Shown: positions 64-63,424, numbered from the stretch's first letter. The stretch: 64,000 bases of DNA from Mytilus edulis (GCF_963676685.1 NC_092346.1:99820001-99884000); one strand, 5' to 3'. Numbers and translations are program-made. The notes: generated from the letters alone by a model not told the origin.

Positions 64-10562
<10,499 letters not shown>

Positions 10563-38440: not shown

Positions 38441-41400
38441 CTAATCCATGTCCGTTTTTCTTCTTACCAGCATGATCCCATCTCTAACAGGAAGTAGGAC
38501 CTAAAAAAATACAATATATGAAATAACTTATCTTAAAATAGTTAAGTATAGCAGCACATGGTGTCGATTGGTGTCTTTGCAGACTGCTTGAAACATTATT
38601 TACAAAAAAGAAGATGTGGTATGATAGCCAATGAGACAACTCTCCACAAGAGACCAAATGACACAGAAGTTAACAACTACAGGTCACCGTACGGTTTTCA
38701 ACAATGATCAAAATCCATACCGCATAGTCAGCTGAAAAAGAAAATTGAAATTAAAAAAAGTTTGTTATTTCATAAAAGGAGTAGGTCCGGTAAGGGCTGA
38801 TTTTGGCCTCAAATTTCAGGTTCATCTGATGAAAGATTTTGAACACTTTTTAAACACTTAAGTGTCTATTTTATTTGAATCAATTAGTTTATGTGAAAGA
38901 TTTTAACTGCCTTAGTCATAAAAAACACATCAATTCAAGCTGAAATATGAAAAATCTACCAAATATGCCGAAAAATGTCACTTTTCAGCTGGTTTTTGTC
39001 TGAAATGAAAGTGGCCGCATCCGTGTTCATCCTCAACCTTTATATATGCTATGTATTATCGTAAAATACAACTTACATTTCAATATTAAGGATGAACACG
39101 AATGCGGCCACTTTCGTTTTACACGAAAACCGTCTAAAATTTAACTAAAATGCTAGAACTGTGAAGTTTTCAGTAATTTAGCATGACTTAATGGTGCTAG
39201 TACCCGATATATATGTGCATTGTTTTGTCAACAATATCCCATATTTATGTAGCAGAAGCATTTTACTGTGCAATAAATAACTAAAAATTTACATTTTAAC
39301 AATTTGGTAAAACTGCTATATTTTGGGGCCAAAAAGGGGTCTTACTGGACCTACTCCTTTTAATTTAAGACTAACTATTTGTTTACTGATCCTTCAGGAA
39401 GATATAAAATAATTCAGCTTGATATGAGAGTATCCAAGTAGTACGAAGAAGGATGTAAAAATACACCCTGGTCCATATTCAAAGTAATATATATTGAATT
39501 CAATGATCACATATATATAAGTCACTTACATGGTAGATATCCTCTCTTGTCGCTATTGTCTCATTCACATCCTTTATTCCATCGTCGTCGGGCGTATCTG
39601 TCATATACGATCTACCACCGGATAACGCATTATCTAGGGCAATAGTACCTCCTGGTGCCAATAAATTGTTCAGGGCTATCTTCATGAAATATATTATTAA
39701 AGTATTTACCTTTATTTTATGTAATCACTATTCACCTTAAGATTAAAAGAGCTAGGGCCAATTTTCACTGAAATGTTTAAACGATCATTTCTAAAATTCA
39801 TAATAATATGTTTGTTTGTAATCTAACATGTGGTCCACTTATAAGTAGCCACAAATAACTTTTCAGTTCTCTTTGTAGCTTACTATGCGTTATGAGTTTT
39901 GTTCATTGTTGAAGGCCGTAGAAATGGTCCCAATGATAACCATACCAAATCCTCGTATTTTTATATAGAGACAGATTTTTGAATATTTGTATTGTCAATA
40001 AAAAAAACCAAAAATTAGACCATTCTTAACCAAAACTGAAATTTGTTGGGATATATATATATATTCATAAGTACGTCTGAGTCAGTGACAACCCTACAAC
40101 AGATGTATCCATCGGATCGCCATCAATGATGGTGATACATGGCTGTGTACATAATGTATATACAACTCGTCTAAACATCAACCCAACAATGTTAGATCTG
40201 TAAATTTGCTTTCGCAAATTTTTGGTTCTTCCCTCGCCGGGATTCGAACCCATGCTACTGTGATATCGTGACACCAAATCGCCTGCACTGCAGCCGTCCC
40301 GCTAGACCACACGACCACCTGGGCTCTCAAATAAAAGAGCTTTCGGTGGGCATGAGTAAAACACATGCCCACCGAAAGCTCTTTTATTTGAGAGCCCAGG
40401 TGGTCGTGTGGTCTAGCGGGACGGCTGCAGTGCAGGCGATTTGGTGTCACGATATCACAGTAGCATGGGTTCGAATCCCGGCGAGGGAAGAACCAAAAAT
40501 TTGCGAAAGCAAATTTACAGATCTAACATTGTTGGGTTGATGTTTAGACGAGTTGTATATACATTATGTACACAGCCATGTATCACCATCATTGATGGCG
40601 ATCCGATGGATACATCTGTTGTAGGGTTGTCACTGACTCAGACGTACTTATGAATATAATTATTTTCTGTGACTGTATCTTACATTAATTTGTAGGATCC
40701 TTTACTATAGATAATTTAGCTGATCTGTAACAATAACATCTTCATGCCTTATATATCATGTACTGTAGTACGCCGCTAGATTAAAACTGACGTGGAAAGG
40801 TAACACATGCCCACCGAAAGCTCTTTTATTTGAGAGCCCAGGTGGTCGTGTGGTCTAGCGGGACGGCTGCAGTGCAGGCGATTTGGTGTCACGATATCAC
40901 AGTAGCATGGGTTCGAATCCCGGCGAGGGAAGAACCAAAAATTTGCGAAAGCAAATTTACAGATCTAACATTGTTGGGTTGATGTTTAGACGAGTTGTAT
41001 ATATATATATATATATATATATGTCTAGCGGGACGGCTGCAGTGCAGGCGATTTGGTGTCACGATATCACAGTAGCATGGGTTCGAATCCCGGCGAGGGA
41101 AGAACCAAAAATTTGCGAAAGCAAATTTACAGATCTAACATTGTTGGGTTGATGTTTAGACGAGTTGTAAATACATTATGTACACAGCCATGTATCACCA
41201 TCATTGATGGCGATCCGATGGATACATCTGTTGTAGCGTTGTAACTGACTCAGACGTACTTATAAATATAATTATTTTCTGTGACTGTATATTACATTAA
41301 TTTGTAGGATCCTTTACTATAGATAATTTAGCTGATCTGTAACAATAACATCTTCATGCCTTATATATCATGTACTGTAGTACGCCGCTAGATTAAAACT

Positions 41401-44400
41401 GACGAGGAAAGGTAACACACGGCCAGCGAAAGCTCTTTTTTTGAGAGCCCAGGTGTGTGGTCTAGCGGGACGGCTGCAGTGCAGGCGATTTGGTGTCACG
41501 ATATCACAGTAGCATGGGTTCGCATCCCGGCGAGGGAAGAACCAAAAATTTGCGAAAGCAAATTTACAGATCTAACATTGTTGGGTTGATGTTTAGACGA
41601 GTTGTATATACATTGCTCTTTTGATTAAACTTCATTAATTTCGATTTGAGACGTCCTTCTATGCAAAATTCTACAAATACGTTTAAAATTTGCAGTGCTT
41701 AAATGTTTATATCTTATTCAAAATGTTAAAATTGTTGATAATTTTTGTGCGAATACTGTGAAGTATTATATATTTTATTATTTTAAGCTTAAATCATTTT
41801 AAGGTTTTGACAATGTAAGTGAAAAAATATAAGAAGAAATCGGTCCCACCTCAAATATAAATAACGAAAAAATAAATAATCATTAAGGAAAGCATGAGTA
41901 CAAAATTGTTTTCGTACATATATAACTATAAACAAATAAAATTACCAATGAAACATATTGGATGTAAATCTAATATTGTAAGTTTAATATGCTCTGCTAG
42001 AAAAGTCTAATTATTTAAGTTATCACAACATAATAAGGGTAATTTACATTACTGAAAAGCTGTACTATAAAGTACAAAGGTATCTCTATTTAAACCAATC
42101 ACTGTAAATTAAAGTTGGATTATTTGAACAAAATAGCATTAAAGTCTATTTGTTTCATAACACACTGTTGCCAGTATAATAGAATTTTATGCGACTGTGC
42201 GTCATACAAGTGAGAGGTTAAGCTAGTTTTAAAACAAGGTTAAATCCACCATTTTCTAAATAAGGAATTATTACAGTTGTTTTCCATTCGTTAAGATGTG
42301 TTTGAGCTTTTGATTTTGCCATTAATTTGATAAGGGACTTTCCGTTTTGAATTTTCCTCAGAGTTCTGTATGTTGTGATCTTACTTTTTTCTAATGAATT
42401 ATCCATTTAAAGTTGTTCAGTAATTTTGATATTTAGTTTTTAAGTTGATATTTATAGATGCAATCTTACCGAATTTCATCTCAGTAAACTTACATGAAAG
42501 TATTCAGATTTTCCAGGTCTATCAGCATCTATGAAAATGAAATCAAACTGTTCTCCTCTTTTTGAAAGGTCTTTAATTGTGTCTAGTGCTGAGCCTAAAA
42601 AAAGCTAGGTTTGAGAAAATGTTTTATTTGTATGTTTTTGTTTAACGTTAATACCCAAGAGATAAGAGCGATCTTAAACCATTAACCTTTGCTTTTATGA
42701 TTTTTATAATTAATGAAAATCGACATTATTGAGCGCAAATAGGGAATACGAAACAGTTTCAGGGGATGTAATGACGTTGTACCGCAAAGTTTCATTTTTG
42801 GAGACGTCAAACTGCGATATATCGAGTACAATTAACATTTTATGGAGTGAAATTAATCATCAGCCTGAAATCGAGTACTTGTGCACTCTTTTTGAAAATG
42901 ACATTTGACTTGATTTTGTTTGAAGATTGTTTGATCCAATTTTTGTGAGAAAAAAATGTTTATTCTTTGCCGAGATTCGAACTACTGATATTGGGATATT
43001 GGGACAACTCAATGGCATGAGCTCGAATGCCGGCGAGCGACGAACAAACTTTGCTTCCGCAAATTTTCTGATCTAACATTTTTGTGCTGATATTTAGAGT
43101 GATTGTGTACTTTTAATATATGTGTTGTCAGTCGTGTATCAACTTTACTGGTTATCCAATGAATGATCTGTCTTATAGTTGTCACTGGCTTAGACGTAAA
43201 TATTATATAATTATAAGATATTATTTATTACCTATAAGAATTTCTACTTTTTTACCATGAGGTGATCGGTCCGTATAGGTCCTTGCAAGTTTGGCTAGAT
43301 ATGGATCAAATTCACATGTAACAACCGTTCCATCATTTGGCATAACTTCTGCCATTCCTAAAGCACTACATCCCGTAAATAAACCTACTTCTAATACCTT
43401 CTTTGCTTTAGAAGTGTTCACTAAAAACTTCAATACATAACCTACAAAACATACAGTTAAAGTATAGTATAGTATTAGCCATATCATAAAAACGCCTACA
43501 AAACATGAAGTACAGTTAAAGTATAGTAGGAGCCATATTATAAAAACGCCTACAAAACATCAAGTACAGTTAAAGTATAGTATTAGCCATATCATAAAAA
43601 CACCTACAAAACATGAAGTACAGTTAAAGTATAGTATTAGCCATATCATAAAAACGACTACAAAACATCAAGTACAGTTAAAGTATAGTATTAGCCATAT
43701 CATAAAAACGACTACAAAACATGAAGTACAGTTAAAGTATAGTATAGTATTAGCCATATCATAAAAACGCCTACAAAACATGAAGTACAGTTAAAGTATA
43801 GTATTAGCCATATTATAAAAACGCCTACAAAACATGAAGTACAGTTAAAGTATAGTATTAGCCATATCATAAAAACGCCTACAAAACATGAAGTACAGTT
43901 AAAGTATAGTATTAGCCATATCATAAAAACGCCTACTAAACATGAAGTACAGTTAAAGTATAGTATTAGCCATATCATAAAAACGACTACAAAACATCAA
44001 GTACAGTTAAAGTATAGTATTAGCCATATCATAAAAACGACTACAAAACATCAAGTACAGTTAAAGTATAGTATTAGCCATATCATAAAAACGACTACAA
44101 AACATGAAGTACAGTTAAAGTATAGTATAGTATTAGCCATATCATAAAAACGCCTACAAAACATGAAGTACAGTTAAAGTATAGTATTAGCCATATTATA
44201 AAAACGCCTACAAAACATGAAGTACAGTTAAAGTATAGTATGAGCCATATTATAAAAACGCCTACAAAACATCAAGTACAGTTAAAGTATAGTATAGTAT
44301 TAGCCATATCATAAAAACGCCTACAAAACATGAAGTACAGTTAAAGTATAGTATGAGCCATATTATAAAAACGCCTACAAAACATGAAGTACAGTTAAAG

Positions 44401-47369
44401 TATAGTATGAGCCATATCATAAAAACGACTACAAAACATCAAGTACAGTTAAAGTATAGTATTAGCCATATCATAAAAACGCCTACAAAACATGAAGTAC
44501 AGTTAAAGTATAGTATTAGCCATATTATAAAAACGCCTACAAAACATGAAGTACAGTTAAAGTATAGTATGAGCCATATTATAAAAACGCCTACAAAACA
44601 TGAAGTACAGTTAAAGTATAGTATAGTATTAGCCATATCATAAAAACGCCTACAAAACATGAAGTACAGTTAAAGTATAGTATGAGCCATATTATAAAAA
44701 CGCCTACAAAACATGAAGTACAGTTAAAGTATAGTATAGTATTAGCCATATCATAAAAACGCCTACAAAACATGAAGTACAGTTAAAGTATAGTATGAGC
44801 CATATTATAAAAACGCCTACAAAACATCAAGTACAGTTAAAGTATAGTAGTAGCCATATCATAAAAACGCCTACAAAACATGAAGTACAGTTAAAGTATA
44901 GTATTAGCCATATTATAAAAACGCCTACAAAACATGAAGTACAGTTAAAGTATAGTATGAGCCATATTATAAAAACGCCTACAAAACATGAAGTACAGTT
45001 AAAGTATAGTATAGTATTAGCCATATCATAAAAACGCCTACAAAACATGAAGTACAGTTAAAGTATAGTATGAGCCATATTATAAAAACGCCTACAAAAC
45101 ATGAAGTACAGTTAAAGTATAGTATAGTATTAGCCATATCATAAAAACGCCTACAAAACATGAAGTACAGTTAAAGTATAGTATGAGCCATATTATAAAA
45201 ACGCCTACAAAACATCAAGTACAGTTAAAGTATAGTATGAGCCATATTATAAAAACGCCTACAAAACATCAAGTACAGTTAAAGTATAGTATAGTATTAG
45301 CCATATCATAAAAACGCCTACAAAACATGAAGTACAGTTAAAGTATAGTATGAGCCATATCATAAAAACGCATCAAATCATTCATACAATTAATCTAACA
45401 CACGATGAACCCCCGATGATAAGTATATTGTCAAAAATTACTTGCACTTTACAATGACTTTTTTCTGTTAGTTTATACAATTTCAAATTCATCTTAACTT
45501 TGTTTAAACTTTATTTTTGCTTACAAAGTTGTTTGTTTAGGCGATTATTTTTCATGAACAAAACTATAGTTCTAGCATTGTTAATACTACACTGAGAAAC
45601 GATCTACAAAACTATAGTTCTAGCATTGTTAATACCCCACTGAGAAACTATAGTTCTAGCATTGTTAATACCCACTGAGAAACTATAGTTCTAGCATTGT
45701 TAATACAACAATGAGAAACGATCTACATTTGCTATGGTATAAACACCGAGGGATTGAATATTCTGAAATTGACTACTTTAAGACCCTTAATGCAATTATA
45801 TTTTCCATTTAGACCAGTACTGATTTCGTTGACTGAGTGGTAATTGTTTGAAATGTAAACTCTTATTTATGTTCACATGCAGCACAATTAAACAAAAAGA
45901 CAAACGAATGGATAACTGTTCTTTTCCTGATTTGGTACATACATCTTTTTATGTAGAAAATTGTGGATTAAATAGCTAGTTACACCTCTCCCTTGTAGGA
46001 CATATAAGTTATAATCATATGTGTAGTATGTCTTATTCTACATGATCCAATACCCATCAACTATACTAATTGGTCGTTTCTATAGACTATTACCGTACAT
46101 ATCTATAATACAAGTATCGGCTGTGAAATCTTTAGTTGTATCAAGTAAATTTTAAACCAGTCATATTTTGTTAATTTTTTGTCAACAAAAGCTAAGCAAG
46201 ACATTTCACACTGACGTATTAATGGCAAAGCGAAGGGTTTATATATAAAAGTAAATGTGTGTACATGTAATTATTTCTTAACCTTCAAGATTTCCAGACA
46301 TCATTACTGGATTGATGTCCCATTTGGTTTGTTCTTCATTAAAAAGTTGCTTCCATGGATGCTCAAGCGTGTCTTTGATAAGAGCTGCCATAGCTTCACT
46401 AGGTCCTGATGTTTTCTGATCACAGTAGTCATCTCTTTTCTACATGATAATATAAAACCATTACTGAAATTAAAGGATTATTTCTGACACTTCTAATTAG
46501 CACTACGATATCGGGTTTGAGAAGAGACGTTATTTATGAATTTGCGTTATTTATTTGTGTGTTTGGTACCAGATTAATCATTCAAGCAGTTCAAATTTCA
46601 AACGGATGGCTTCAATTTGTTTTTATGCGGTGTTGTTACAATGCTGGCCCATATTGGGGAATGATGAGCGAGCACAAACATCTTTAACCCCGCCTCATTC
46701 GTTATGTGCCTGTTCAGATTCATCAATTTTTAATCAAGTGATGGTCGTTGTTTGATGTCTGTCGTAATAGGTTTATTGTTGCAGCATAAATTAGGAAAAT
46801 GTTTTTCTTTTTTGAATGATTTCACATGTTGCCCATCGAGAATCTTGCATAGCTCTCTACACCGTATTAGTTTTGCACATTAATGGCCGTATATGGTGAA
46901 ATGCAATTGTTCACACCCTTGTCCTTTGGTCTTTATTGACATGACAGTAGATTCATATCATCTTATTGTTTCTATATATATAAAATCAAAGTATCAATTT
47001 AATTTTAATTTTCATGTCATCATTGTATGCTTTATTTTAAAACGAAAAAAAATCGGGCCAAATATAAGTATATAATGTTGCGACATAATGTGTTACATTC
47101 ATAATGTTTACCCAAGCTTTCAAATTTAACTTTCATTCAGCAGTCACATTAAGGTCCGTGGCTTAAATGTTTTTTTTCTGAAAACAAAAATATTGTCTTG
47201 AAGAAAATTATTCTGATTCAAAACTTAAAAGTAAGCTCGTTACCTTCATCAGTTCACCAACCCTTTCTAAACCAGAAATAACAGTCTCTGGAACATCCAT
47301 TGATTTCGCTAATGTAATGACTTCTCTTAGTTTTCTCACAGCTGGGTCGTGGTGGTGTGAACCTGACAT
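38441..47369 (-). CDS. Class I (cation-dependent) SAM O-methyltransferase, OMT-1, MysB/CCoAOMT-like, 267 aa
   Basis: Exons 47369-47244, 46439-46283, 43441-43232, 42594-42494, 39679-39530, 38500-38441 (804 nt). Motifs MMSGNLEG, VLEVGLFTGCSALGMAE, CEFDPY, SPHGKK, FDFIFIDADR, LLAPGGTIALDN, LPVRDGIMLVRR. Internal exon sizes match OMT-2. Confidence 0.92.
38775..39360. mobile_element. MITE (Kolobok-like termini) in the last intron of OMT-1
   Basis: TIR aaaggagtaggtccggtaag / cttactggacctactccttt; internal hairpin aaagtggccgcat / atgcggccacttt. Confidence 0.88.
40051..41614. mobile_element. tRNA-derived (Pol III A/B box) 442-bp repeat unit in inverted plus tandem array
   Basis: A box TGGTCGTGTGG at 40401-40411, B box GGTTCGAATCC at 40468-40478. 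Period 442 (40361 to 40803). 40065-40354 is the reverse complement of 40364-40653. (TA)n at 40051-40064 and 40998-41022. Confidence 0.85.
42955..43205. mobile_element. Old diverged copy of the tRNA-headed element, also with an inverted 5' arm
   Basis: ttctttgccgagattcgaac (reversed head), then gcatgagctcgaatgccggcgag..gcaaatttt..gatctaacatt..gtcactggcttagacgta. Confidence 0.65.
43441..45370. repeat. 54/59-bp satellite, about 35 units, abutting the acceptor of OMT-1 coding exon 3
   Basis: Unit cctacaaaacatgaagtacagttaaagtatagtattagccatatcataaaaacg; the 59-bp variant has an extra atagt. Confidence 0.97.
45561..45728. repeat. Short tandem repeat, 4 units of ~36-48 bp
   Basis: aaactatagttctagcattgttaatac..actgag occurs four times. 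Confidence 0.85.
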
Positions 47370-47934
47370 TGTTCTTTAAAATTACTAAAATTCAGTAACT
47401 ATATATAAAAAAAAAAAAAAGATTTATCAGGACGACAACGGTTTTCGTAGCTTTAAAAAAATCAACGTAAACGCTAATTGACACATCTGATAATATTGTT
47501 ATTATGAAATAAAACAGCAAGTTGTTTTTGCTTTTAATCGTATAAGCCCTTTTTTGAAATATTTAACTCGTGATATATGTTTTGAAGAAAATTGTGCTTT
47601 AAGCACTCGAATGTTACGTTCGGCAAATCACTACCGGTCAAATCATTAACATATTCAGTTGAAAGGCTCCGCTTGCTACAAAGATTACGACTTAGTACAT
47701 TAAAGATTGGCAGATCTTTGCAAGATAGTTTCAGATGTATGAGAATGCACGTGATTGCAGTTAAGGAAATGATTGTACAATTATTCTGAAAGATATGACA
47801 GTTGTTTTCCATTCGTCCAACGTTTAATTTTGTCAGTTTTTATGAACCCCCTTTCCATGCTTTCTGATTTACGAGTTTTATATTTTTTATACTTTCTTAT
47901 GTACATACATAAATGATTAAAACCGTCAAAATCA

Positions 47935-49540: not shown

Positions 49541-50039
49541 AGATATAGAATTATATAATTATTTCTTTTACATTTAATAAATTATTAGTATACTATGAGG
49601 TGTGCAGTCCAATAAAGGGACCAGAGTAACAGACAATGGGTCATTTTATGTATTTTTTTTTAATACAAATTGCTTACTTTATTTACGTTTATATTTTATA
49701 TCAATCAATTAAATCAAAATCAATCATATTATGTACTTTGTTTAACCTATTTTTAATTTACTTTACATTATGTTTGAAAATTATGTTGTTATTATTCTGC
49801 TCATTTTGAGCGCCATGATTGGCAAATAAAATATTTGGTTGTTTGTTTGTTTGTGTGTTTGTTGATTATAATCATATTACATAACCAGTTGCTACTAATA
49901 AAACATAATATTCCGAATTAAGCTTTCAGATTTTAAGTTGATGCAAAATAAACGTGAAGTTGGATGTGTCTTTTCAAAGAGGCATTACTCCATAATCACT
50001 CCAAAATATCACACAAATCATGAATAATATATTTAACTA

Positions 50040-53636: not shown

Positions 53637-54310
53637 AATCTCCATAGTTGTTGTGAGACGTTTAGACATTTGTTACAAACTCTGTATGTAACGCCATTTG
53701 GTCCGGGTATTGATGCTGCTCTTTAAAGTTGGCATCACTTCATGAAGTTTGGGTTCTGACATATCAAACTCTATTGCTGGCTCATCTGGACTTATCAATC
53801 TGTGTTGGTCTTCAATGTCTTGTTCTCTGTCTGGATCACTATAAGTTTCTCTCAAATATTGTTCAACCTCTTCTTTTTGGCGATCTAACCGGTCCGATCT
53901 TTTATCTCCTAAAAGCTTTTTTACAAAGCCAAATGGATTAGGTGTTAATTGTTATGTCTTTCTTGCTCTTTCCCTTTTGTTCATTTTAAGGTTCTCTGCT
54001 CTCCTCAGTGTTTGTATTCTTTCCCTGTTGACATCTCTTAGCTCTTTTAATGCCTTTTGTTCGTGTAACTCTGCTTTCTTTCTTGAGGCACTTTGTTAAG
54101 TTTTGTTGTTCTCTCCTCAGTTTGGCAATGTCACTTTCTCTTCTGTTCTCTTCCATGGCCTGACTCTTAACTTTCTTCTGTTCTTCCATTCCAAACCTGT
54201 CTTTCCCCATTGCGAAGATAATGGTAATCATTGCTTTGATCTTTCTGTCTACATCTCCTGCCGATGCCGATTGTATCTCAATCCACGTCACATTTTGCAA
54301 AAGATAACCA
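53637..54310 (-). mobile_element. Decayed non-LTR retrotransposon fragment (HERO-like, region just upstream of the RT core)
   Basis: Frameshifted translation ENRRESDIAKLRRE.., EEVEQYLRETYSDPDREQ..EPKLHEV.., RAASIPGPNGVTYRVCNKC..LWRL matches the APGPNG..Y..YK.CP..LW motif of non-LTR RTs. Confidence 0.75.
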
Positions 54311-55469
54311 TCATATGTCTTTTTCTTTTCATTTTAGGAAAAACTGCAACGCAGGAAATGGCTATGACAGGGCAAAAAAGTAATTTTAATGTAATGGCTT
54401 TGCAAAATTAAAATTTTAGTCTACAGTTATGCCGGCCCTTTTCTTGATTTGACACTCCACTATTATAGTACTCGGGTTTTACCTTTACAGTTAAAATCTT
54501 CCAATCAATAGGACCGGGTCAAATTATACTGTATTGAATACTTCTATTTGTATGTCAACACCGTCTCATATTTCAATACACTTTTCTTATTTACAAAAGA
54601 ATAACAAACCTGAGGTTATATAAAAGCTTTCGTTCGGCCAAGTATATTAAAAAAAAGTTTGAATAACAAGTTTTATTCCAATGTTGGTATTCATCAATAA
54701 TTTTAATGTGTAATAAATCAGTTTGTCACCCCCCCCCCCCCCCCCTCCCCACTACTACCACTACAATGAAAAAAAATATCATTCAAAAGTGCAATATTTG
54801 AAGTGTTCCAACTCTTAAAAAGGAAATGAAAATTTAAGAAAATTGTAAAAACTACTACCATTCCACCTAATGACTTAATATTCAGTGTATGCGTCATATG
54901 TCATATGATTTATTATCATAAAACACACTATAAATATACAAGGTTAATATTTAGAGCGGCTTTATTGATCTGTTAAAGCACGGGAGAAAAAGGTATGTTG
55001 AAATTAAAGAAAACCATTTACATAATACTGTTACAGTGAAAAAGCCTAAAAAGGACAGATATATGTGGTATTCTGTTATGGAATTTTCACTTGAAAAATA
55101 AAACCGTTTTCTTAAGGAAATTGTGAACATATACATCTAACATATTTTTGCAAACTAACTACAAAATAAAGCTGAGTCAGCTATTTGTTTTTTAAAGAAG
55201 GTGGTGTTGATGGAAGCTGTGTTTAAATATCTGTTAAATTCATTTATGAGTTTGTTTAGATCAATTTTAAGATTGACATATCGTATAGACATTTATTTAT
55301 GATAAAAGTTCATATTTAATATCCCCCCATTTTCATCTTTTATTTATCTGCAGTGTATAAGTATCCTTTTTGTGAGGAAAAGTGGATATATAAGAAGACG
55401 TTATCTATGTTTTTCTGTTTGTTTGCGGTGTTTCATTCACCTTAATTGATCTCTTGGTTTTACAGGAAA

Positions 55470-58400
55470 ATGAGTAAACGTAGCCGTGACCCAGCGATAA
55501 ATAAACTGAGAGAGGTGAAAGCAGAAGCCGAATCCCTGGGAATACCTGAGACAATTATCAATGGGTTACAGGCAGTTGATGATTTGGCAACGGTAATTAA
55601 CATATGAACTTAAAGTGATGATACCTCTAACATGTCCATACATTGTACTTTCTCTAGATTAAATGTCAGCATCGTGTTATTCCGAATAAATCAATAAGGT
55701 TAGTTATTAAAGATTTTGTTATTTGACAAATTGTTAGTTGGCAATCTATAAAGATAAAGCCGCGGTTGTTTTCCTAAAAATATGTTCCTGTTTAATGTAA
55801 TCACTTCTTGGAAAAAGAAAATAAAAGATAGAGGACCTTATTAAAAAAACCAGTTCCTTCAAGTGAGACAAATATTTTGAATATACATTTTCATTTTCTT
55901 TTTGTATTATATAAAAGGATAAGCCAGAATGACACATCGTTCCTTTTAAGTCAAGGATAAGCAACATGGCCAGAACCGGGAGATATATCTTTAAAAGCTC
56001 TTCAATGCAGTGAGAGAAAACAAAACAAATATACTACTAGTCGTGTAGGAAGATACGGTACATTTTTACACAGTATATGTATTTTATGTTCATACATATC
56101 TGAAATCGATTTCTTCACCTGTTTTTTTATTGAAAGGCTCGGGAAGATTATTGCGACAGTAAGACGTCGACAGCAAGTGAGCCAATGGCAGCACTGATAA
56201 AAGATACTTTTGAACATCCCTGGCAGAATGTATACAAAGAAGGGAAAACGACATGGAATATCACCCCTAGAATGATGTCAGGAAATCTTGAGGGTAAAAT
56301 ACAAGCAAAGATAAAAACCAAATAAATCACTTTTTTGGATATCTGAATAGTAGAGCGATACTTCATTGAATTATTGCTTTCGGTTTAATATTAAGCGAGC
56401 GTTACACATACTGAAAAGAAAAAGAAAACGCAAACAGATAAAAAAAGAAACTAGCAATTAAACATAAACAAGCAGAGAGAGCGAGAGAGATGTAGATCAG
56501 TTCCTATTCATTGAATTTGTTCTATGTTTGTTTGGTCCACACTGCATGATTGCTTTTATACATTGCTTTTATCAAGCTTATTATAACAAATGTTGTCATT
56601 CAAAGTTTATGTTTTACCAAATCTAGTAAATTTGAAATGATGTCAATTTCAACTACTAACATTTTCATTTTCTTTTTTTAGGATATGTTTTAAAATTCTT
56701 AGTCAGTGCTTCTAAATCCAAAAACGTTCTTGAGGTGGGTATGTTTACTGGATGTGCAGCCTTAGGAATGGCAGAAGTTATGCCGGATGACGGGAAGGTC
56801 GTCACTTGTGAAATTGATCCATACCTAGTTGACCTAGCTAGAAAATTGATGGACAGGTCGCCACATGGAAAGAAGGTCGAAATTCTTACTGGTAAGGCTG
56901 TGTATACATCAAACAATTAGCTATGGATTCAATGGAAATATTAAAGGCATTAATTTTCTCAATTGCAGGGGCAGATCCAGGATTCTGGAAAGGGGGGCGA
57001 AGTTTTTAAATTCGCCGAGCGGAGCGAGACGGAAAATTTTTCGGACCTTTTTTTGGCTAAAAAAACATGAAATAAGTGTAATATGCACTTTTAAAACGAC
57101 ATTTGGAACACCATTACACGTTCAAAAAGTGTTACAAAAAAGCGTTCAAGCAGTGTTCTATTTATTAACACTTAGATTTACAGTGTGGCGTGGTGCATGT
57201 ATATTTTGTAGTTCCTGAAAGGTGTAAGGGTTGGACATTTTCGATGCTGTATTCTCCTTATTAATTGTTTATCACAAAATGATAGTATGTTTCAAGCTAT
57301 TTACTGATAAATTTGATGTGGGACTTTTCAGTAAAAAAAGACATGGAAAATTCTCGCTGGTTTGCTGTAAGTTAAGTTATGATAACCTCACAGATTTCTT
57401 GGGCTATTCGATAAAATTTACAATACGACGGACACGAGCTAAAAAAGACAAACAAGCAATATTTATCCAAATGTTTGGTTGATATGTTTCACCCAACAAA
57501 ATTAAGGGATGTGAGGGATTCCAAATCAACCAAAAGCTACGAATGAGTCTGAAATCATCGGACAACGATTATATGAAAGACGGTAGAAAAATGTAGACAT
57601 TAAGGCCACTTCCAGCAGCAGGTTGTAGTCTGGTCTTGAAAAAAAATATTCAATATATCATTTCGGCGAAACAGACATTCCGGTCAGACATCGCGGCAAA
57701 CCCCGGCCAAAAAAAAAACTTGAAAACGTCCGTTTTAATCTTTTATGTTCATTTAATGCTTAATAATTCTGTTGGATATTCGTTTCTAATAGCAAAAAAA
57801 TGGACAAGATTATTGTTTTCAATCCAGATATGGCCAGAATTTTTGTTTAATGCAAAGATTAGAGTCAATTTTTTATCTCTCAAATATCTCAGACTGCCTC
57901 CTCAAATCAAATGGTTCGTACCTTAGAATTTAAATCTATCTAGAGATAATACTGACTGGGGATCATTATTCAGCTGTTATTTTAAAATATTATAGGATGC
58001 CGATCATGGGGCGTTACGAGTTAAATAATAACTGAGTGACGTTTTTTCGACGCACTGGTCAACTCCACTATAGTGAATCACATGACTTTCAGTTAGTATA
58101 CACCAGCGAAACATATCTTTTTAAAGTAAAGAATTGTCACATACACGGGAAATGGCAAAGTTCACGTCGTCTAGTCTGATTAATCTTTAAACTTTTACAC
58201 ACAAAAAAAAAAGTCCAAGCAAAAGGGGGGCGGGCGTACGCCCTCTACGCCCCCCTCTGGATCCACCACTGAATTGTATTCAGGGTAAATTAAAACAGGT
58301 GCTGTGTTGCGTTTCCACAAGTTTCACCTCATGATCGTATATTATGAAAATAGGCACGAGCAATTATTTCAGTCTTTTATCTTTTTAATGAAATTTGTGT

Positions 58401-60312
58401 AAAATCAGAAACAATGAATTTGAGAACGTAAAATTGTGCGAACATTGGACACTTCTTGTACATGTTGCTGCATCTTATTCCATTTTGCTATTATTTTGAT
58501 TTGAATGAAGGTGTTTCAAATTATACATGTATCTAATGAAAAAGGCTTTTTACGTTTAAGGAATTGAAAAAAAAATCTAACGATTAATGTTCTATCTATT
58601 TAGAACCTAAACTTGAATCTTGATTTTGTTTAAACATCTTGATAAATTTTAAAACATGTAAATACAGTCATTTCTTTTGTCGTTTAGAAATGAGCAGTCA
58701 ATATATGGTAGTACATTCTTTCTTTTCATGTCATGTTTGTGTTATGTATACATGCTCTAATAATATAAATGTAAAACAGGCATTTCTAACTTCATTTATA
58801 CTGCAATTAGTCGTGTTTATTTTATAATATAGTAACACAGCTTTATTTTGTGCAATGTCAATTTCATCATGGAACACTTTTTCCATAGTCAGGGGTTTAT
58901 TAAGCAATGAAAATAAGTTTGAAATTTGCGTAATAATTCAAAGAGCTATGAATTTATTCATTTATGTTGCAGTATAAAAACAATATTAGGTCAATGTCAG
59001 AACAATATAAACATTTTTGTAATCGGCGCAAAACTGGGGAAGCCATCAATACATTTATCTTACTTCTCTCTATGAATTTGACCTCCCGAATAGTAGAACA
59101 GTTATGATTTGTTTTAACTTTAATAAGTTTTTTCTTACTATATGTCGTTTTAGGTCCAGCAATAGAGAGTCTAAATGGTTTGGCTAAGAAAAATCAGAAG
59201 TTTGATTTCATCTTCATAGACGCTGATAAACCGGGTTATTGTGATTATTTTAATGTAAGTGTATCATGTGTAACAAGGAAAAGATAATTTATAAAGCAAA
59301 ATGAAAAAAACTAACATCATATTTGATACATCGTTAAAAAGATCTAATCATCAAATAATACTTATAGAATGGTCATAATTACATGTGACTTTATTTTATA
59401 AACCGATTTCAGTTTAATATTTGACTTCGTATTTACATTTATGCACCTTTACTTTTTTGTTACAATATAACTTCCATGCCACAGTTCAGATATATGTAAT
59501 TTACATTTATTTGATTATATTTCAAGATATGCTTCTCCGAACTTCTGGCCCCCGGAGGTACTATTGCAATGGACAATGCCTTATTTGGAGGTAAACCGTA
59601 TATGACAGATTCGACACCAAACGAAGGCGTTACCAAGTTTAACAACATGATCGTGACAAGAAAGGATATTTATTATGTACGTAACTATAACTAACTCATT
59701 GTTCAAGGTAAAAAAAAAAATATCAGCAATAAATACTCAAAACCATGCTTTACTCAAAATACATACTATCAGGATGATGTGAATACTTAAATTTTCGAAA
59801 ATCTGCCAGATAACATATAACCAAATGTTTACTCTCCAAAATACCTACAGATATTGTGTTGACGTTTAGTATGCAGTAGATTTAATAAAATTACAATATA
59901 TATGATATGTCATGTCAGAACACGAACACAGACTAGGCTGGTCAAATGCCTCGACCCGGCGTTTGTCATGTCAAAACACGAGTACAGACTACGCTGGTTA
60001 TATGCCTCGACCCAGAGTTTGAATTAAACTATCAAATAAAAAACTTGATGCTGACGTATAGTATAGTCAATGAACTAGATCTATTGAATATTGATGCAAA
60101 CAGGATGGAGTTATAGATGACTTTAAAAAAATTGAACCTGCTTCATTTACATTGTTTTGTTACATCATAATTTTTACACGTGCCTCCACCCCGAATAACA
60201 AAATCTTTAATAACATATATTGGTACTGTCTGCATTTTTGTAGGTTTTGATGCCTATAAGGGATGGTATTATGCTGATCAGGAGAAAAGAGGACATGAAT
60301 GGAACCGTTTAA
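55470..60312 (+). CDS. Class I SAM O-methyltransferase, OMT-2, MysB/CCoAOMT-like, 269 aa
   Basis: Exons 55470-55592, 56137-56293, 56682-56891, 59154-59254, 59527-59676, 60244-60312 (810 nt). Motifs MMSGNLEG, VLEVGMFTGCAALGMAE, CEIDPY, SPHGKK, FDFIFIDADKPGY, LLAPGGTIAMDN, MPIRDG. An acceptor 4 nt before the ATG implies an upstream non-coding exon. Confidence 0.94.
56966..58271. mobile_element. Non-autonomous DNA transposon with a 5-bp target duplication (hAT5-like), in an OMT-2 intron
   Basis: AATTG|caggggcagatccag...ctggatccaccactg|AATTG. Confidence 0.8.
59908..60020. repeat. 56-bp direct duplication in the last intron of OMT-2
   Basis: tgtcatgtca.aacacga..acagacta.gctggt.a.atgcctcgaccc occurs twice. 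Confidence 0.8.
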
Positions 60313-62300
60313 TATAAGCTTATATAAGAGAAAAGAGCAAGCAAGCATTAACTACATGTTGTTAATTGGCACGTATCTTTCAAGCAGATATTGTGTAATG
60401 GTTTTAAGCAACTTGTTTTGCCGTTTAAAAGACGATTTTAGTTTTATATTTTTCTTTTATTAAATGGCTTGTATTAACATTCTGTCTGTAAGTGATAATG
60501 GGATATTGCTACAATAAAAAGAAAGATTACAATTATTTGTTGTTTTTTTTTTTATAATAACACAATGTTGACCTCAATTTCATTTTTACCAATTATGTCT
60601 GTTTGTTTTGTTCTACGTAAGAAAATGCCTAATCATACCAAGACAGGAATCTCAGTTGTTGTCCATTCGTTTGATGTGTTTGATCATTTGATTTTGTCAT
60701 TTAGTTACAGTTTCCGTTTCGTTTTTTTGTTATTTTATTTTTTGTCAAATAATGTCCGGGAACCAGTCTAAATAACTCCGTACCTGACTACAATAGATTT
60801 TGGTGTGGTGTTGTTGAAAATTTAGTCTCACGAGACGTGAGGACGGTGAGGTAGAGGAATCTGTCCCTGTTATTTTCCTATTTTTTGTATGGTTTTTTTT
60901 TTGCAATCTTTTTGCATGATTCTCTATGACTAAATGTTTTCCATTGCCCATTCGAATTAAAATATAGATTTCTGTTTCGTTATACTACATATGAGTATAA
61001 CGTAATCAGGGATCTATATTTTAATTAGAATGTCTATTGCCCTGACTCTCGGAATCTTACTTGCTTTTTTTATCTTAATATTTAGGTGGGTATCAAGATT
61101 TTGTTGCTATATAGATATCAATTGATACAAATCTTAATCATGAAAAGAATATATTAACCTAAGGGTCCCTTTTGGTTTCTTCTATAATTAAAAAAAGTAA
61201 AATAACAAAAATGTATTTTGAGTCATATTGGCGATCATGCATGGTGTCTGCTCTATGGTCGAATTGTTGTCTCTTTGACACATTCCCCATATCCATTCTC
61301 AATTTTGTTTAACAGATTGTGCCCCAATAACTCCATAATACATTTATGAACCTTTCTACATTGACCTACAATGGTTTACTTTTATAAATTTGTTATTTGG
61401 ATGGAGAGTTGTCTCATTGGCACTAACAACACATCTTCCTATATCTATTGTAAGACAATTTTATAAAAAATGCACATTAACAAACAACAGAAAACGGCGA
61501 CAAGGCTAGTAACAGTCCAAAACCAAACGCAGAAAACTGATCAACATTCAACTCATAAAAAAGGGGGAAGCATACTCAGTGAATTCAGATCGTTTCGAAG
61601 GTTTTGCTCAACTACTGACGCTCATGTAAAAAAAAATCCTATCGTTTGATGAGGCGTTATACAACAGACTTTTAGATAAGTACAAATACGTAAAATTAAA
61701 TGAAGGTAGATTAAGAAAAGCGCCTCAAACGTACCATTATAGAGTTACATTGTCATGGTTTGTACTCATATCATGAGTTTGTCAAGTGTTTTCGAATGAG
61801 CTCTACTAAAACTAATGGACGATGCTTTAAAACTTTAAAAAGTAAATTAACAAAAATATCGAGCTCCAAGAGAAATTCAAAACGGAAAGTCCTTCATAAT
61901 GGCAACATCAAAAGTTCAATCACATCAAACAGGCACATTAAACCAGACATATATATACATTTTGTAACACCAGAAAATACTTATAACAAAAAAAATATCA
62001 AAAGAATCTCCAAACCTTTTTAAAAGAGCACCCAATTACCTTGGAAAAACTAATGACGGCAAATCCCCTTTCGAAAAAACAAAAACAATAAAATAAAACT
62101 TTCATAGCCAGATTTGATAAGATATATTTTGAAAATATTGTAGAATAATTATAAAATACTCCACAAGTTTACAGCTACATTTATGTGTATAGTGATTAAT
62201 TAAATTTAGAACAAATGTATACATAATAAAAAGTTAAAAAGGTTATGTCATGCAACTGTATCGGCTCAATCAATAACTTCACATCTGACTTGAAAAATCT

Positions 62301-63424
62301 TCACCCGTTCATATCTTCCTTTCTCCTTACAAGCATTATTCCATCTCTCACTGGCATTAACACCTAAAAGAAATGTTTTTTTTTCTCAATTAGAATTATT
62401 AAGTTGACACCTAGTATACTACATTTTTATCATACGTGGTTCATTTTGTATCGCCAGGCTGTGCAAAAAAAAATAAACAACAAAAAAGGTAAGCCAGAAC
62501 TAAATACATTAAAATTTATTCAAAACTTAATAAATATCTTTAAAAACAATGCGACTCTTTGAATTTACATATCAGTGTTCATTTAGAAAACATATAGTAA
62601 GAAAAAACTTATGAAAACATTTACTCCAACATTTCCTGCTTATATATAATAGATACATTGTAACAAAATAACACGTTCATGTAAAATGTTGTATGTATAT
62701 ATTTTTGTAACTTTCTTAGTCTCTGTAAGTACTTGAAATTTTTACTGTTGATTTTTTTTTTAAACTAACCTGAACAAGTGTTTACAACTTTCACATGTAA
62801 CTTTAATTCATACGTGTACATATGCATTCTCAACAGGAAACATTTACCCTGTCGACTGACCACGCTCGTTTAGAAGTTCATGCAATGTTCGATGTGTTGA
62901 AGACCTATTGGTGGTCTTGGGCTGTTTTCTATAATTTAGTCGGTTAGTTGTCTCTTTGACATGTCCCCCTTTCAATAGTCGGTTAATTGTCTCTTTGACA
63001 TGTTCCCCCTTTCAATAGTCGATTTTAATTACTCCAGTTTTTAGTTTGATTTGTATTTATGCGATGAACTACTGTTGCCTCTCATTTGAAGATCATTTAA
63101 TCTCCATAGATAGCTTTTCATTTGTAATCATATCATTTCTCTTATTTATGTTAAAGTATCCATTTTCTGCGTTCAAATTATGTACATAGGTCAATGCATT
63201 ATTGGTGCATGATAATTTATTCAAATTTCAATGGCAACTTTTTCTTGTTTCACAATTAATGAATGAATACGTACATGATAAACATCATTCCTGGTCATTA
63301 GCATATCGTTAAATCTTTTGATTGGTTCGTCGTCAGGACATTCTTTTAAATACGGTTTTCCATAGTGTAATGCGTTGTCCAGAGCGATAGTACCACCTGG
63401 TGCTAGAAGGTCTTTTATCGATAC
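62301..63424 (-). CDS. Class I O-methyltransferase OMT-3, last two exons (gene continues beyond the window)
   Basis: Exons 63424-63275 (VSIKDLLAPGGTIALDNALHYGKPYLKECPDDEPIKRFNDMLMTRNDVYH) and 62363-62301 (VLMPVRDGIMLVRRKEDMNG*); same phases as OMT-1 and OMT-2. Confidence 0.92.

What the first reader, a model, noticed from the sequence alone, without database searches (positions are those of the whole stretch)
38441..63424. Cluster of spliced animal O-methyltransferases resembling the mycosporine (UV sunscreen) enzyme MysB
Seen: three paralogous class I OMTs (-, +, -) with shared intron positions, so they are host genes and not bacterial contamination. The two complete ones have a ~90-aa N-terminal region ending W....EG.T.W...P.MMSGNLEG (OMT-2), plus CExDPY and SPHGKK motifs. 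Established: cyanobacterial MysB, the O-MT that works with the DDG synthase MysA to make 4-deoxygadusol, is a ~280-aa class I OMT. As I recall it, it carries W...F..G.T....EMLSGHxEG, CEVDPY and SPHGxKI, which plant CCoAOMT and vertebrate COMT/COMTD1 lack. Mussels accumulate shinorine and porphyra-334, usually attributed to diet. Inference: this is an expanded MysB-type family that may make or modify mycosporine/gadusol-type compounds, or was repurposed (e.g. for catechols). No MysA/C/D gene is visible in the window, and the MysB comparison is from memory.
Basis: partly seen in the sequence, partly recalled or inferred. Interest (0 to 1): 0.8.

Follow-up and report, generated by a model that had tools for sequence, protein, structure and literature searches.

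The report
Mussel MysB-type O-methyltransferase gene cluster
The blue mussel has three neighbouring genes, at least one of them transcribed (plus a fourth elsewhere), for methyl-adding enzymes whose closest relatives make microbial and fish sunscreens, but the genome lacks the partner enzymes, so what they methylate in molluscs is an open, testable question.

Summary
The window (Mytilus edulis, chromosome-scale contig C3) holds three paralogous six-coding-exon genes (-, +, -). They encode 267-269 aa Methyltransf_3 O-methyltransferases. All 15 introns are GT..AG at identical positions. OMT-2 is spliced exactly as predicted in transcript contigs from four studies. Replacement changes between the paralogs are about 0.2 per site while silent sites are saturated, so the copies are old and constrained.

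The MysB link is real as homology. The proteins carry the roughly 95-aa N-terminal extension that, in bacteria, marks OMTs lying beside MysA and MysC (18 of 20 such loci have both; 0 of 60 loci with a short generic OMT have either). A tree puts them with those MysB proteins and with fish/algal MT-Ox, away from generic OMTs (support 100/98). Within that group they form a separate mollusc-only clade (100/99) spanning bivalves, gastropods and octopus.

The biosynthetic reading is not supported. Six searches of the 1.37 Gb genome found no sugar-phosphate cyclase (DDGS/EEVS) and no MysC.

These are orphan MysB-type enzymes. Published mussel and pearl-oyster data that probably concern this family link it to tyrosinase and byssus chemistry. 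The substrate is unknown, and I think a catechol is slightly more likely than a gadusol-type ring. This is a new animal branch of a known enzyme kind, of moderate interest.

The parts
38441..47369 (-). OMT-1 gene, start to stop codon. Six coding exons: 47244-47369, 46283-46439, 43232-43441, 42494-42594, 39530-39679, 38441-38500. Product 267 aa. The catalytic-base motif reads DADR instead of DADK.
   Evidence: all introns GT..AG, sum 804 nt. The ortholog P0151 (M. trossulus, 'O-methyltransferase MdmC-like') aligns exon by exon.
47244..47369 (-). OMT-1 exon 1 (ATG at 47369)
46283..46439 (-). OMT-1 exon 2, the second half of the N-terminal extension (HPW...MMSGNLE)
43232..43441 (-). OMT-1 exon 3, SAM-binding core (LEVGLFTGC, CEFDPY, SPHGKK)
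42494..42594 (-). OMT-1 exon 4, first metal ligand (FIDADR)
39530..39679 (-). OMT-1 exon 5, the Asp-Asn metal ligands (LDNAL)
38441..38500 (-). OMT-1 exon 6 with stop codon TAG
55470..60312 (+). OMT-2 gene, start to stop codon. Six coding exons: 55470-55592, 56137-56293, 56682-56891, 59154-59254, 59527-59676, 60244-60312. Product 269 aa. A further 5' non-coding exon upstream is spliced onto 55464/55465.
   Evidence: All five GT..AG joints appear in spliced contigs of 4 runs from 4 studies, and loose ends lie before 55464.
56137..56293 (+). OMT-2 exon 2, N-terminal extension motif HPWQNVYKEGKTTWNITPRMMSGNLE
56682..56891 (+). OMT-2 exon 3, SAM-binding core. This was the query of the exhaustive protein search.
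59154..59254 (+). OMT-2 exon 4 (FIDADK: metal ligand and catalytic Lys)
59527..59676 (+). OMT-2 exon 5 (MDNAL: Asp-Asn metal ligands)
60244..60312 (+). OMT-2 exon 6 with stop codon TAA
62301..64000 (-). 3' part of OMT-3: exon 6 at 62301-62363 (stop TGA) and exon 5 at 63275-63424. Exons 4-1 lie past the window end at window-equivalent 64313-64413, 65047-65256, 66136-66292 and 66797-66922 (locus L001). Product 268 aa, equal to RefSeq protein P0153.
   Evidence: Every exon translation is an exact substring of P0153.

Best explanation
SHOWN.
- The stretch holds a tandem cluster of three intact Mytilus edulis genes. They are old duplicates under purifying selection. OMT-2 is shown to be transcribed and spliced. 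A fourth paralog lies on contig C2.
- Each gene encodes a stand-alone enzyme of about 268 aa from the SAM- and divalent-cation-dependent class I O-methyltransferases (Pfam Methyltransf_3).
- They belong to the N-terminally extended branch of that family, which also holds bacterial MysB (the 4-deoxygadusol O-methyltransferase of mycosporine clusters) and the methyltransferase half of vertebrate and algal MT-Ox (gadusol synthesis).
- Within that branch they form a separate clade found across molluscs.

INFERRED MECHANISM. As in the solved relatives, Asp187, Asp214 and Asn215 (P0153 numbering) would hold a metal ion that chelates two neighbouring oxygens of the substrate. A Lys in the DADK motif would deprotonate one hydroxyl, which then takes the methyl group from SAM. 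In OMT-1 that Lys is Arg. The extra N-terminal helices pack onto the Rossmann core and probably shape the substrate pocket.

INFERRED ROLE. The genome has no detectable sedoheptulose-7-phosphate cyclase (DDGS/EEVS) and no MysC, so the genes do not form a de novo sunscreen pathway. They are orphan MysB-type enzymes. My best guess is that molluscs use them on an endogenous catechol or enediol tied to tyrosinase/DOPA chemistry (byssus, periostracum). A gadusol-type cyclohexenone obtained from food or microbes is the main alternative.
For: Gene structure and splicing.

Constraint: pN 0.18-0.21 against pS 0.72-0.74 between the paralogs.

Family: PF01596 matches. The AF2 model (pLDDT 95.6) has cation-dependent OMTs as its nearest solved structures (SafC, SynOMT, CCoAOMT; TMq about 0.7), leaving the first 40-50 residues unmatched. 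The metal-ligand columns D187, D214 and N215 are invariant and K190 is nearly invariant in 40 sequences.

Branch membership:
- Careful ML tree: 100/98 for N-extended against generic OMTs, and 100/99 for the mollusc clade.
- 41% identity over the full length to context-verified MysB and to fish MT-Ox.
- Bit-score ranking across groups.
- 46 positions are conserved identically in the mollusc clade and in verified MysB, including Y47, S56, T66 and W71 of the extension.
- Of the 20 bacterial loci whose OMT has a full-length extension, 18 have MysA and MysC alongside. None of 60 loci with a shorter OMT has either.

Mollusc-wide spread: Mytilus, Crassostrea, Ostrea, Argopecten, Pinctada, Solemya, Haliotis, Lottia, Littorina, Pomacea, Gigantopelta, Octopus.

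No partner enzymes: PF01761, PF24621, TIGR01357, the MysA protein, the MysC protein and NF005315 all came back empty in the 1.37 Gb genome. The same MysA query finds targets down to 27-39% identity in bacterial genomes.

Precedent for an orphan: the L021 OMT, which carries the extension only from about query residue 31, sits in an unrelated neighbourhood in a cyanobacterial MAG with no DDGS-level match.

Catechol lead:
- These four genes are the only PF01596 matches in the genome.
- An 'O-methyltransferase MdmC' (MG163580.1) rises at mRNA and protein level (log2FC 2.78, 12 peptides) together with a tyrosinase-like protein in M. galloprovincialis foot during byssus regrowth (PMC12607631).
- A Pinctada 'caffeoyl-CoA O-methyltransferase' unigene is listed with tyrosinase in the tyrosine pathway during larval shell formation (PMC4445274).
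- The family occurs in a deep-sea vent snail and a freshwater snail, where a UV role is not obvious.
Against: No enzyme assay exists, so the substrate is pure inference.

Every characterised member of this branch (MysB, MT-Ox) methylates a cyclitol-derived ring, not a catechol. The N-terminal signature residues are as conserved in molluscs as in MysB, with only one position that is conserved but different between the groups. That argues against a large change of substrate.

The identity of the genes in the two expression papers with this family rests on their annotation names and on the absence of other PF01596 genes, not on sequence.

The genome searches read six frames exon by exon, so a cyclase split into very short exons, or lying in unassembled sequence, could be missed. 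Only M. edulis was searched.

COMTD1, COMT, plant CCoAOMT, and cnidarian, dinoflagellate and fungal MysB could not be put in the tree because no tool returned their sequences as usable ids.
Confidence: 0.45

Rival explanations
1. The enzymes still work on mycosporine or gadusol chemistry. They would methylate a desmethyl-(deoxy)gadusol-type cyclohexenone supplied by food algae, gut or gill microbes, or an undetected host cyclase. In that case mussels finish or remodel sunscreen and antioxidant compounds themselves.
For: The genes sit in the clade whose characterised members all act on such rings, and 18 of 20 bacterial members with a full-length extension lie in mys clusters. The extension's signature residues are conserved between molluscs and MysB. 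The closest scores are to fish MT-Ox and to MysB. According to PMC6971080, 4-deoxygadusol and many mycosporines occur in a giant clam, their origin is unsettled, and no clam biosynthetic genes were known.
Against: No cyclase and no MysC were found in the genome. Mycosporines taken up from food already carry the methyl group. The unmethylated intermediate is not known to accumulate in food organisms (my own knowledge). The family is kept in vent and freshwater snails and in octopus. It is induced in mussel foot alongside tyrosinase.
Confidence: 0.3
2. The genes are ordinary animal COMTD1, COMT or CCoAOMT-like housekeeping O-methyltransferases, as their database names ('probable caffeoyl-CoA O-methyltransferase 1', 'MdmC-like') suggest, with no special relation to MysB.
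For: They share the Pfam family and fold. Public annotation uses those names.
Against: phmmer bits are only 80 to CCoAOMT, 71 to COMTD1 and about 35 to COMT, against 178-212 to MysB and MT-Ox. None of the solved relatives aligns with residues 1-50. Generic OMTs are split off at 100/98 in the tree.
Confidence: 0.04
3. Bacterial contamination, a recent unexpressed insertion, or decaying pseudogenes.
For: The nearest non-mollusc relatives are bacterial and algal.
Against: There are five spliceosomal introns per gene at shared positions. The composition is AT-rich like the host. The genes lie on a 107 Mb contig between animal genes. Spliced transcripts exist. The reading frames are intact and pN is far below pS. 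Orthologs occur across molluscs.
Confidence: 0.01

Closest known systems
MysB, the O-methyltransferase of bacterial mycosporine-like amino acid clusters (mysA-mysB-mysC-mysD/E)
   Same: Length of about 270-280 aa. The same roughly 95-aa N-terminal extension with Y47, S56, T66 and W71. The same metal-ligand and SAM-binding motifs. 41% identity over the full length to the Anabaena sp. 4-3 enzyme that lies between a DDGS-type cyclase and an ATP-grasp ligase. Same branch of the tree.
   Different: The mussel genes are intron-bearing animal genes in a separate mollusc-only clade. They do not lie beside, or share a genome with, a detectable cyclase or MysC. They have multiplied to four paralogs, one of which has Arg at the catalytic Lys position.
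MT-Ox, the bifunctional methyltransferase-oxidoreductase of gadusol synthesis in fish, other vertebrates and some algae (Osborn et al. 2015, PMC4426668)
   Same: It gives the highest score of any non-mollusc relative: 212 phmmer bits and 41% identity across the whole MT domain including the extension (P0026 Channa striata, P0041 Vitrella).
   Different: MT-Ox carries a C-terminal short-chain dehydrogenase domain and, according to the paper, lies next to EEVS. The mussel proteins stop after the MT domain, and no EEVS was found. The paper lists MT-Ox only in vertebrates and two algae.
Cation-dependent class I OMTs with solved structures: SafC (Myxococcus), SynOMT (Synechocystis), plant CCoAOMT/PFOMT, Legionella 3R3H
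   Same: Same fold (TM-score normalised to target 0.82-0.89), same metal site and the same likely catalytic mechanism on vicinal hydroxyls.
   Different: They are 210-250 aa and lack the first two long helices. Sequence scores are half as high or lower. They fall outside the N-extended clade.
Human COMTD1 (PDB 2AVD) and COMT
   Same: Animal members of the same Pfam family. These four mussel genes are the only PF01596 matches in the genome, so they could fill a COMT-like role.
   Different: Only 71 bits (COMTD1) and about 35 bits (COMT), aligned over the core only. There is no sign of orthology.

Membership tests
Pfam Methyltransf_3 (PF01596), cation-dependent class I O-methyltransferases | Profile match above the curated cut-off | tested here: met
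   Exon 3 alone scores 45.7-62.7 bits against a cut-off of 22. The genome-wide scan recovers the exons of all four paralogs. The full-length bivalve homolog P0013 scores 125.8 bits.
Pfam Methyltransf_3 (PF01596), cation-dependent class I O-methyltransferases | Metal ligands (Asp of DADK, and Asp-Asn of xDNxL) and the catalytic Lys | tested here: met
   D187, D214 and N215 are invariant and K190 is at least 90% conserved in the 40-sequence alignment A2. OMT-2, OMT-3 and the C2 paralog have DADK. The OMT-1 lineage has DADR. The assignment of roles to these residues comes from solved COMT and CCoAOMT structures (my own knowledge).
Pfam Methyltransf_3 (PF01596), cation-dependent class I O-methyltransferases | Rossmann-type class I fold | tested here: met
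   AF2 model with pLDDT 95.6. The top Foldseek hits are SafC, SynOMT and CCoAOMT at E about 1e-18.
MysB/MT-Ox-type (N-terminally extended) branch | N-terminal extension of about 95 aa with conserved Tyr, Ser, Thr and Trp ahead of the MxSGxxEG helix | tested here: met
   Alignments A1 and A2. Y47, S56, T66 and W71 are at least 80% conserved both in the mollusc clade and in context-verified MysB.
MysB/MT-Ox-type (N-terminally extended) branch | Groups with context-verified MysB and with MT-Ox, excluding generic OMTs | tested here: met
   Careful IQ-TREE run on 77 rows: the split has support 100/98, and two quick runs gave 99. COMTD1 and CCoAOMT were not in the tree and were compared only by score.
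MysB (functional: 4-deoxygadusol pathway) | A sedoheptulose-7-phosphate cyclase (DDGS/EEVS) beside the gene or elsewhere in the genome | tested here: not met
   PF01761, PF24621, TIGR01357 and the Anabaena MysA protein gave no match in the 1.37 Gb genome. The same protein query finds targets at 27-100% identity in three bacterial genomes. The flanks hold guanylate cyclase, EGF-repeat and kringle/VWD genes.
MysB (functional: 4-deoxygadusol pathway) | An ATP-grasp MysC in the genome | tested here: not met
   The Anabaena MysC protein and NCBIfam NF005315 (which scores MysC at 568 bits) gave no match.
MysB (functional: 4-deoxygadusol pathway) | Methylates desmethyl-4-deoxygadusol | not testable with these tools
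   This needs an enzyme assay or complementation.
MT-Ox (gadusol) | C-terminal short-chain dehydrogenase domain fused to the MT domain | tested here: not met
   The reading frames end at 267-269 aa with stop codons in exon 6. P0026 and P0041 carry adh_short, while the mollusc proteins carry only PF01596 and related methyltransferase profiles.
COMTD1 / CCoAOMT / COMT | Closest similarity to those proteins | tested here: not met
   71, 80 and about 35 bits respectively, over the core only, against 178-212 bits to MysB and MT-Ox.

The most novel reading that the evidence does not exclude
Molluscs run a split sunscreen/antioxidant pathway. A cyclohexenone precursor made by food algae or associated microbes would be O-methylated by these host MysB-type enzymes. 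Part of the mycosporine/gadusol pool of mussels, long ascribed to diet alone, would then be finished or remodelled by the animal. The four paralogs would have different ring substrates.
Probability: 0.2. Interest if true: 0.8.

Novelty: new member of a known kind. Interest (0 to 1): 0.5.

Why it matters
Whether marine animals make, finish or only accumulate mycosporine- and gadusol-type sunscreens is a long-standing question. The searchable literature places the MysB-type or MT-Ox-type methyltransferase only in cnidarians, vertebrates and microbes or algae. A 2020 giant-clam study states that no such genes were known in clams.

This report shows a conserved, constrained family of that enzyme type across bivalves, gastropods and cephalopods, hidden under generic names such as 'caffeoyl-CoA O-methyltransferase' and 'MdmC-like'. 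That gives four concrete mussel proteins to express and assay.

If they act on gadusol-type rings, the dietary-only view of mollusc sunscreens falls. If they act on catechols, this is a clean case of a sunscreen-pathway enzyme repurposed after losing its partners. It would possibly feed into DOPA and byssus chemistry, which matters for bio-adhesives. Either way the public annotations mislead about the family's nearest relatives.

Tried and rejected
1. Joined spliced protein model. I searched exon by exon. For full-length work I used database proteins that the tools returned, chiefly P0153, which holds all six OMT-3 exon translations exactly.

I stopped that step and used coordinates only from then on.

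I therefore could not view the gene neighbourhoods of the mollusc, fish and algal homologs. Bacterial context came from the search for related loci instead.

4. The exhaustive protein search was used early. The word search cannot take a 69-aa exon and return full-length kin, so it was the only way in.

5. NCBIfam on the exons gave only weak generic methyltransferase hits, and NCBIfam has no MysB model.

6. The word search with Anabaena MysA returned only cyanobacterial cyclases in its top 120. It confirmed that the neighbour gene is a demethyl-4-deoxygadusol synthase but said nothing about molluscs.

7. Paper searches for mycosporine or MysB together with mussel or mollusc found no report of these genes.

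8. A local metabolic gene cluster was rejected. About 38 kb upstream, 28 kb downstream and the flanks of the C2 paralog hold unrelated animal genes.

10. The sister group of the mollusc clade, and hence a donor or a vertical origin, is unresolved (support 53/78). I make no claim of horizontal transfer.
Full report
**What is there**

The window is G000:C3:99820001-99884000 of a 1.37 Gb animal assembly. It is AT-rich throughout, with GC about 0.30-0.34. The RefSeq protein P0153, 'probable caffeoyl-CoA O-methyltransferase 1 isoform X2 [Mytilus edulis]', comes from a contig of exactly the length of C3, 107,021,180 bases. So the genome is the blue mussel.

ORF listing and tblastn with window-derived exon pieces show three paralogous genes on the -, + and - strands. 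Their pieces match Pfam PF01596 Methyltransf_3. Exon 3 alone scores 46-63 bits against a cut-off of 22.

Codon-level reading of the borders gave these six-coding-exon models:
- OMT-1 (-): 47244-47369, 46283-46439, 43232-43441, 42494-42594, 39530-39679, 38441-38500.
- OMT-2 (+): 55470-55592, 56137-56293, 56682-56891, 59154-59254, 59527-59676, 60244-60312.
- OMT-3 (-): 62301-62363 and 63275-63424 in the window, then four more exons beyond the window end in locus L001.

All 15 introns are GT..AG. Exons 2-5 are 157, 210, 101 and 150 nt in all three genes. The coding sums are 804, 810 and 807 nt.

**They are live host genes**

I laid contigs of four runs from four studies on 55400-60400. Each run has one spliced contig of about 0.6-1.0 kb that carries the predicted GT..AG joints: 55591/56136, 56292/56681, 56890/59153, 59254/59527 and 59676/60244, with the stated cut offsets. 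Loose ends before 55464 show a further 5' non-coding exon.

All six OMT-3 exon translations are exact substrings of P0153. Transcript-sized Logan contigs encode close orthologs of OMT-1 (P0152), OMT-2 (P0154) and a fourth paralog (P0156).

That fourth gene lies on contig C2 and has the same motifs. These four genes are the only PF01596 matches found in the genome. That count is a lower bound by the tool's own caveat.

Between the three clustered paralogs, pN is 0.18-0.21 while pS is 0.72-0.74, which is saturated. I computed this over exons 2-5, exon by exon, without building a joined model. The duplicates are therefore old and kept by selection.

**How I searched, given the rules**

I did not build or search a joined spliced model. 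Because the word-indexed search cannot return full-length kin for an exon, I gave OMT-2 exon 3 (69 aa) to the exhaustive search.

It found 1192 proteins at E<=0.001. The best full-length ones are 266-286 aa with the match starting near residue 100, so they share a long N-terminal region.

Among the hits were two proteins of about 550 aa with Methyltransf_3 followed by a short-chain dehydrogenase domain. One is from the fish Channa striata and one from the alga Vitrella. That is the MT-Ox architecture of gadusol synthesis (PMC4426668).

A word search with the full-length bivalve homolog P0013, plus three cluster look-ups, named the animal relatives. All are molluscs: Mytilus edulis and M. trossulus, Crassostrea/Magallana, Ostrea, Argopecten, Pinctada, Solemya, Haliotis, Lottia, Littorina, Pomacea, Gigantopelta and Octopus. 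They are annotated as 'caffeoyl-CoA O-methyltransferase', 'O-methyltransferase MdmC-like' or uncharacterised.

**Is it MysB-type?**

I needed true MysB sequences defined by context, not by name. A scan of one genome per bacterial species with an alignment of the long forms returned 80 loci.

The Anabaena sp. 4-3 locus reads: DHQ-synthase-like cyclase, OMT, ATP-grasp, NRPS-like enzyme. The Nostoc NIES-4103 locus reads: cyclase, OMT, ATP-grasp, D-Ala-D-Ala-ligase-like enzyme. These are the two canonical mys cluster layouts (my own knowledge). The cyclase is named sedoheptulose 7-phosphate cyclase or demethyl-4-deoxygadusol synthase by NCBI, UniRef and JGI.

I built small HMMs for MysA and MysC from these loci and scanned all 80:
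- Of the 20 loci whose OMT carries a full-length extension (L003-L020 and L022), 18 have both MysA and MysC alongside.
- L011 has MysC only. L016 has MysA only, and its contig ends at the OMT.
- None of the 60 other loci has either. All but L021 of these hold short, about 210-220 aa, generic OMTs.

In bacteria the extension is thus a good marker of MysB.

The mussel protein P0153 aligns from residue 17 to 262 with the Anabaena MysB (41% identity, 197 bits). It aligns from residue 2 to 262 with the fish MT-Ox (41%, 207 bits).

In one scoring scheme (phmmer bits), P0153 gives:

| Target | Bits |
|---|---|
| Fish MT-Ox | 212 |
| Vitrella MT-Ox | 192 |
| Context-verified MysB (median) | 178 |
| Generic bacterial OMTs (median) | 125 |
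| Best solved structure (Legionella 3R3H) | 103 |
| Alfalfa CCoAOMT | 80 |
| Human COMTD1 | 71 |
| COMT | about 35 |

No solved relative aligns with the first 50 or so residues.

A careful maximum-likelihood tree was run on 77 rows and 281 columns under LG+C20+F+G4, with two long-branch rows left out (P0109 and P0188). Support values are ultrafast bootstrap / SH-aLRT:
- N-extended group against generic OMTs: 100/98.
- All mollusc sequences as one clade: 100/99.
- Mytilus cluster genes plus close bivalve kin: 100/96.
- The same with the C2 paralog added: 100/98.
- Bacterial mys-cluster OMTs: 92/96.

Two quick runs agreed. The order of the sub-clades inside the N-extended group is unresolved (53/78 and lower). 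I therefore cannot say whether molluscs are nearer to MT-Ox, to algal forms or to bacteria, and I make no claim about transfer.

The Anabaena MysB has EMLSGHIEG, CEVDPY and SPYGAKI. However, MxxG..EG and SPHG.KI also occur in a generic 210-aa Kangiella OMT (P0167). The diagnostic part is the upstream extension. Y47, S56, T66 and W71 are conserved at 80% or more both in molluscs and in verified MysB. They are among 46 positions conserved identically in both groups, against a single position that is conserved but different.

**How it probably works**

An AlphaFold2 model of P0153 built on 40 aligned relatives is very confident (pLDDT 95.6, pTM 0.92). It shows four N-terminal helices (9-23, 28-50, 57-68, 71-76) ahead of a standard Rossmann-type core.

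Foldseek's best solved matches are cation-dependent OMTs: SafC, SynOMT, Legionella 3R3H, PaMTH1, CCoAOMT, norbelladine OMT and COMTD1. They cover about 220-240 of the 268 residues. The first two helices have no solved counterpart, and no MysB or MT-Ox structure is in the library.

The columns that correspond to the metal ligands (D187, D214, N215) are invariant. The Lys of DADK is nearly invariant. The roles of these residues are taken from COMT and CCoAOMT structures (my own knowledge).

The inferred chemistry is this. A metal chelates two neighbouring oxygens of a catechol or enediol. A base deprotonates one hydroxyl, and SAM donates the methyl group. The OMT-1 lineage (M. edulis, M. trossulus, P0152, P0013) has Arg in place of that Lys. 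This conserved change hints at a different activity in that paralog.

**Is there a pathway?**

No. The whole genome gave no match to any of the following:
- PF01761
- PF24621, where the only hit had E 4.9
- TIGR01357 aroB
- the Anabaena MysA protein
- the Anabaena MysC protein
- NF005315, the model that scores MysC at 568 bits

As a positive control, the same MysA query found targets at 100%, 39% and 27-29% identity in three bacterial genomes. The same six-frame method found the 33-70 aa OMT exons of the mussel.

The neighbourhood is unrelated. A receptor guanylate-cyclase-like gene and a duplicated segment lie upstream. EGF-repeat genes lie downstream. VWD, TIL and kringle genes lie beside the C2 paralog.

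An orphan state has a bacterial precedent. The OMT of a Pseudanabaenaceae MAG (L021), which matches the extension only from about residue 31, sits among unrelated genes. Its genome shows only an AroB-level match (28%) to MysA. The MAG may be incomplete.

**What it may do instead**

The searchable literature has no report of these genes as mycosporine-related. A 2020 giant-clam study says that no such genes were known in clams (PMC6971080). Osborn et al. list MT-Ox only in vertebrates and two algae.

Two expression papers use the generic names:
- In M. galloprovincialis foot regrowing its byssus, 'O-methyltransferase MdmC' (MG163580.1) rises at transcript and protein level (log2FC 2.78, 12 unique peptides), together with a tyrosinase-like protein (PMC12607631).
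- In Pinctada, a 'caffeoyl-CoA O-methyltransferase' unigene is listed with tyrosinase among tyrosine-pathway genes that change during larval shell formation (PMC4445274).

These are probably family members, because no other PF01596 gene was found in Mytilus and Pinctada has members of this family. That identification is an inference, not a sequence match.

The family is also kept in a deep-sea vent snail, a freshwater snail and octopus. Taken together, this tilts me slightly towards a catechol/DOPA-type substrate (about 0.45) over a gadusol-type ring from food or microbes (about 0.3). The strong conservation of the MysB-type extension is the main argument for the latter.

**Verdict**

- This is a new, phylum-wide animal branch of a known enzyme kind, mislabelled in public annotation.
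- Interest is moderate (0.5).
By its description it is not MysC-like. I did not test it.

Noticed in passing
window 42494-42594 (OMT-1 exon 4): The catalytic-base motif DADK reads DADR in OMT-1. The same change is present in M. trossulus P0151, P0152 and P0013, so it is conserved in that lineage. OMT-2, OMT-3 and the C2 paralog keep Lys. A Gigantopelta copy (P0018) has DAGA at this motif.
   Followed up: partly
G000:C2, about 88675675-88688290 (L002 1675-5221 and L086 4077-4286): A fourth, unlinked paralog with the same N-terminal motif (HPWNDLFQEGKIKFNMKTSMMSGNVTG, CDFDPY, SPHGTK). It is sister to the C3 cluster in the tree and spans more than 12 kb.
   Followed up: partly
window 43500-45400 (OMT-1 intron 2): A long minisatellite of roughly 54-nt units. 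The unit repeats the sequence that lies just upstream of the exon 3 acceptor, and it produces many false ORFs on both strands.
   Followed up: no
window 40065-41624 (OMT-1 intron 4): A GC-richer block (0.38) of inverted and tandem copies of one element. Mirror-image ORFs at 40178-40450 (-) and 40268-40540 (+) encode nearly the same 90 aa (one residue differs). It looks like nested MITE-type repeats.
   Followed up: no
window 47900-49600: A very AT-rich (GC 0.24) simple-repeat tract in the 8 kb spacer between the divergently oriented OMT-1 and OMT-2 genes.
   Followed up: no
window 23200-26100 and 30400-33300; N run at 34169-34395: A segmental duplication about 7.2 kb apart, with identical ORFs at 23843-24130 and 31060-31347 and near-identical ones at 23222-23464 and 30393-30680. 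An assembly gap follows.
   Followed up: no
window 4322-4633 and 6898-7224 (+): Exons of a receptor guanylate-cyclase-like gene (catalytic-domain motif [14 protein letters not shown]). It is unrelated to the OMTs.
   Followed up: no
window 55464/55465: The OMT-2 transcripts carry extra 5' sequence spliced onto the acceptor just before the ATG, so there is an upstream non-coding exon that I did not map.
   Followed up: no
L021 7959-8744 (Pseudanabaenaceae MAG): A stand-alone OMT carrying most of the N-terminal extension (aligned from about residue 31). It lies among lipoate ligase, ABC transporter, TPR, NYN and P-type ATPase genes. Its genome has only an AroB-level match to MysA. It is a bacterial orphan of the MysB-type branch.
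   Followed up: partly
L003 5368-10106 (Nonlabens antarcticus, Bacteroidota): An unusual mys cluster: a 572-aa cyclase with a long N-terminal extension, then a HAD-family hydrolase between the cyclase and the OMT, then a MysC-like gene with no Pfam hit. L007 and L012 each carry two tandem MysC copies.
   Followed up: no
P0001, P0069, P0072 (eukaryotic transcriptome and metatranscriptome proteins): Other architectures of the N-extended OMT. P0001 is a tandem double OMT of 533 aa. P0069 (858 aa) and P0072 (691 aa) have long N-terminal regions that hit no Pfam family. They probably come from protists.
   Followed up: no
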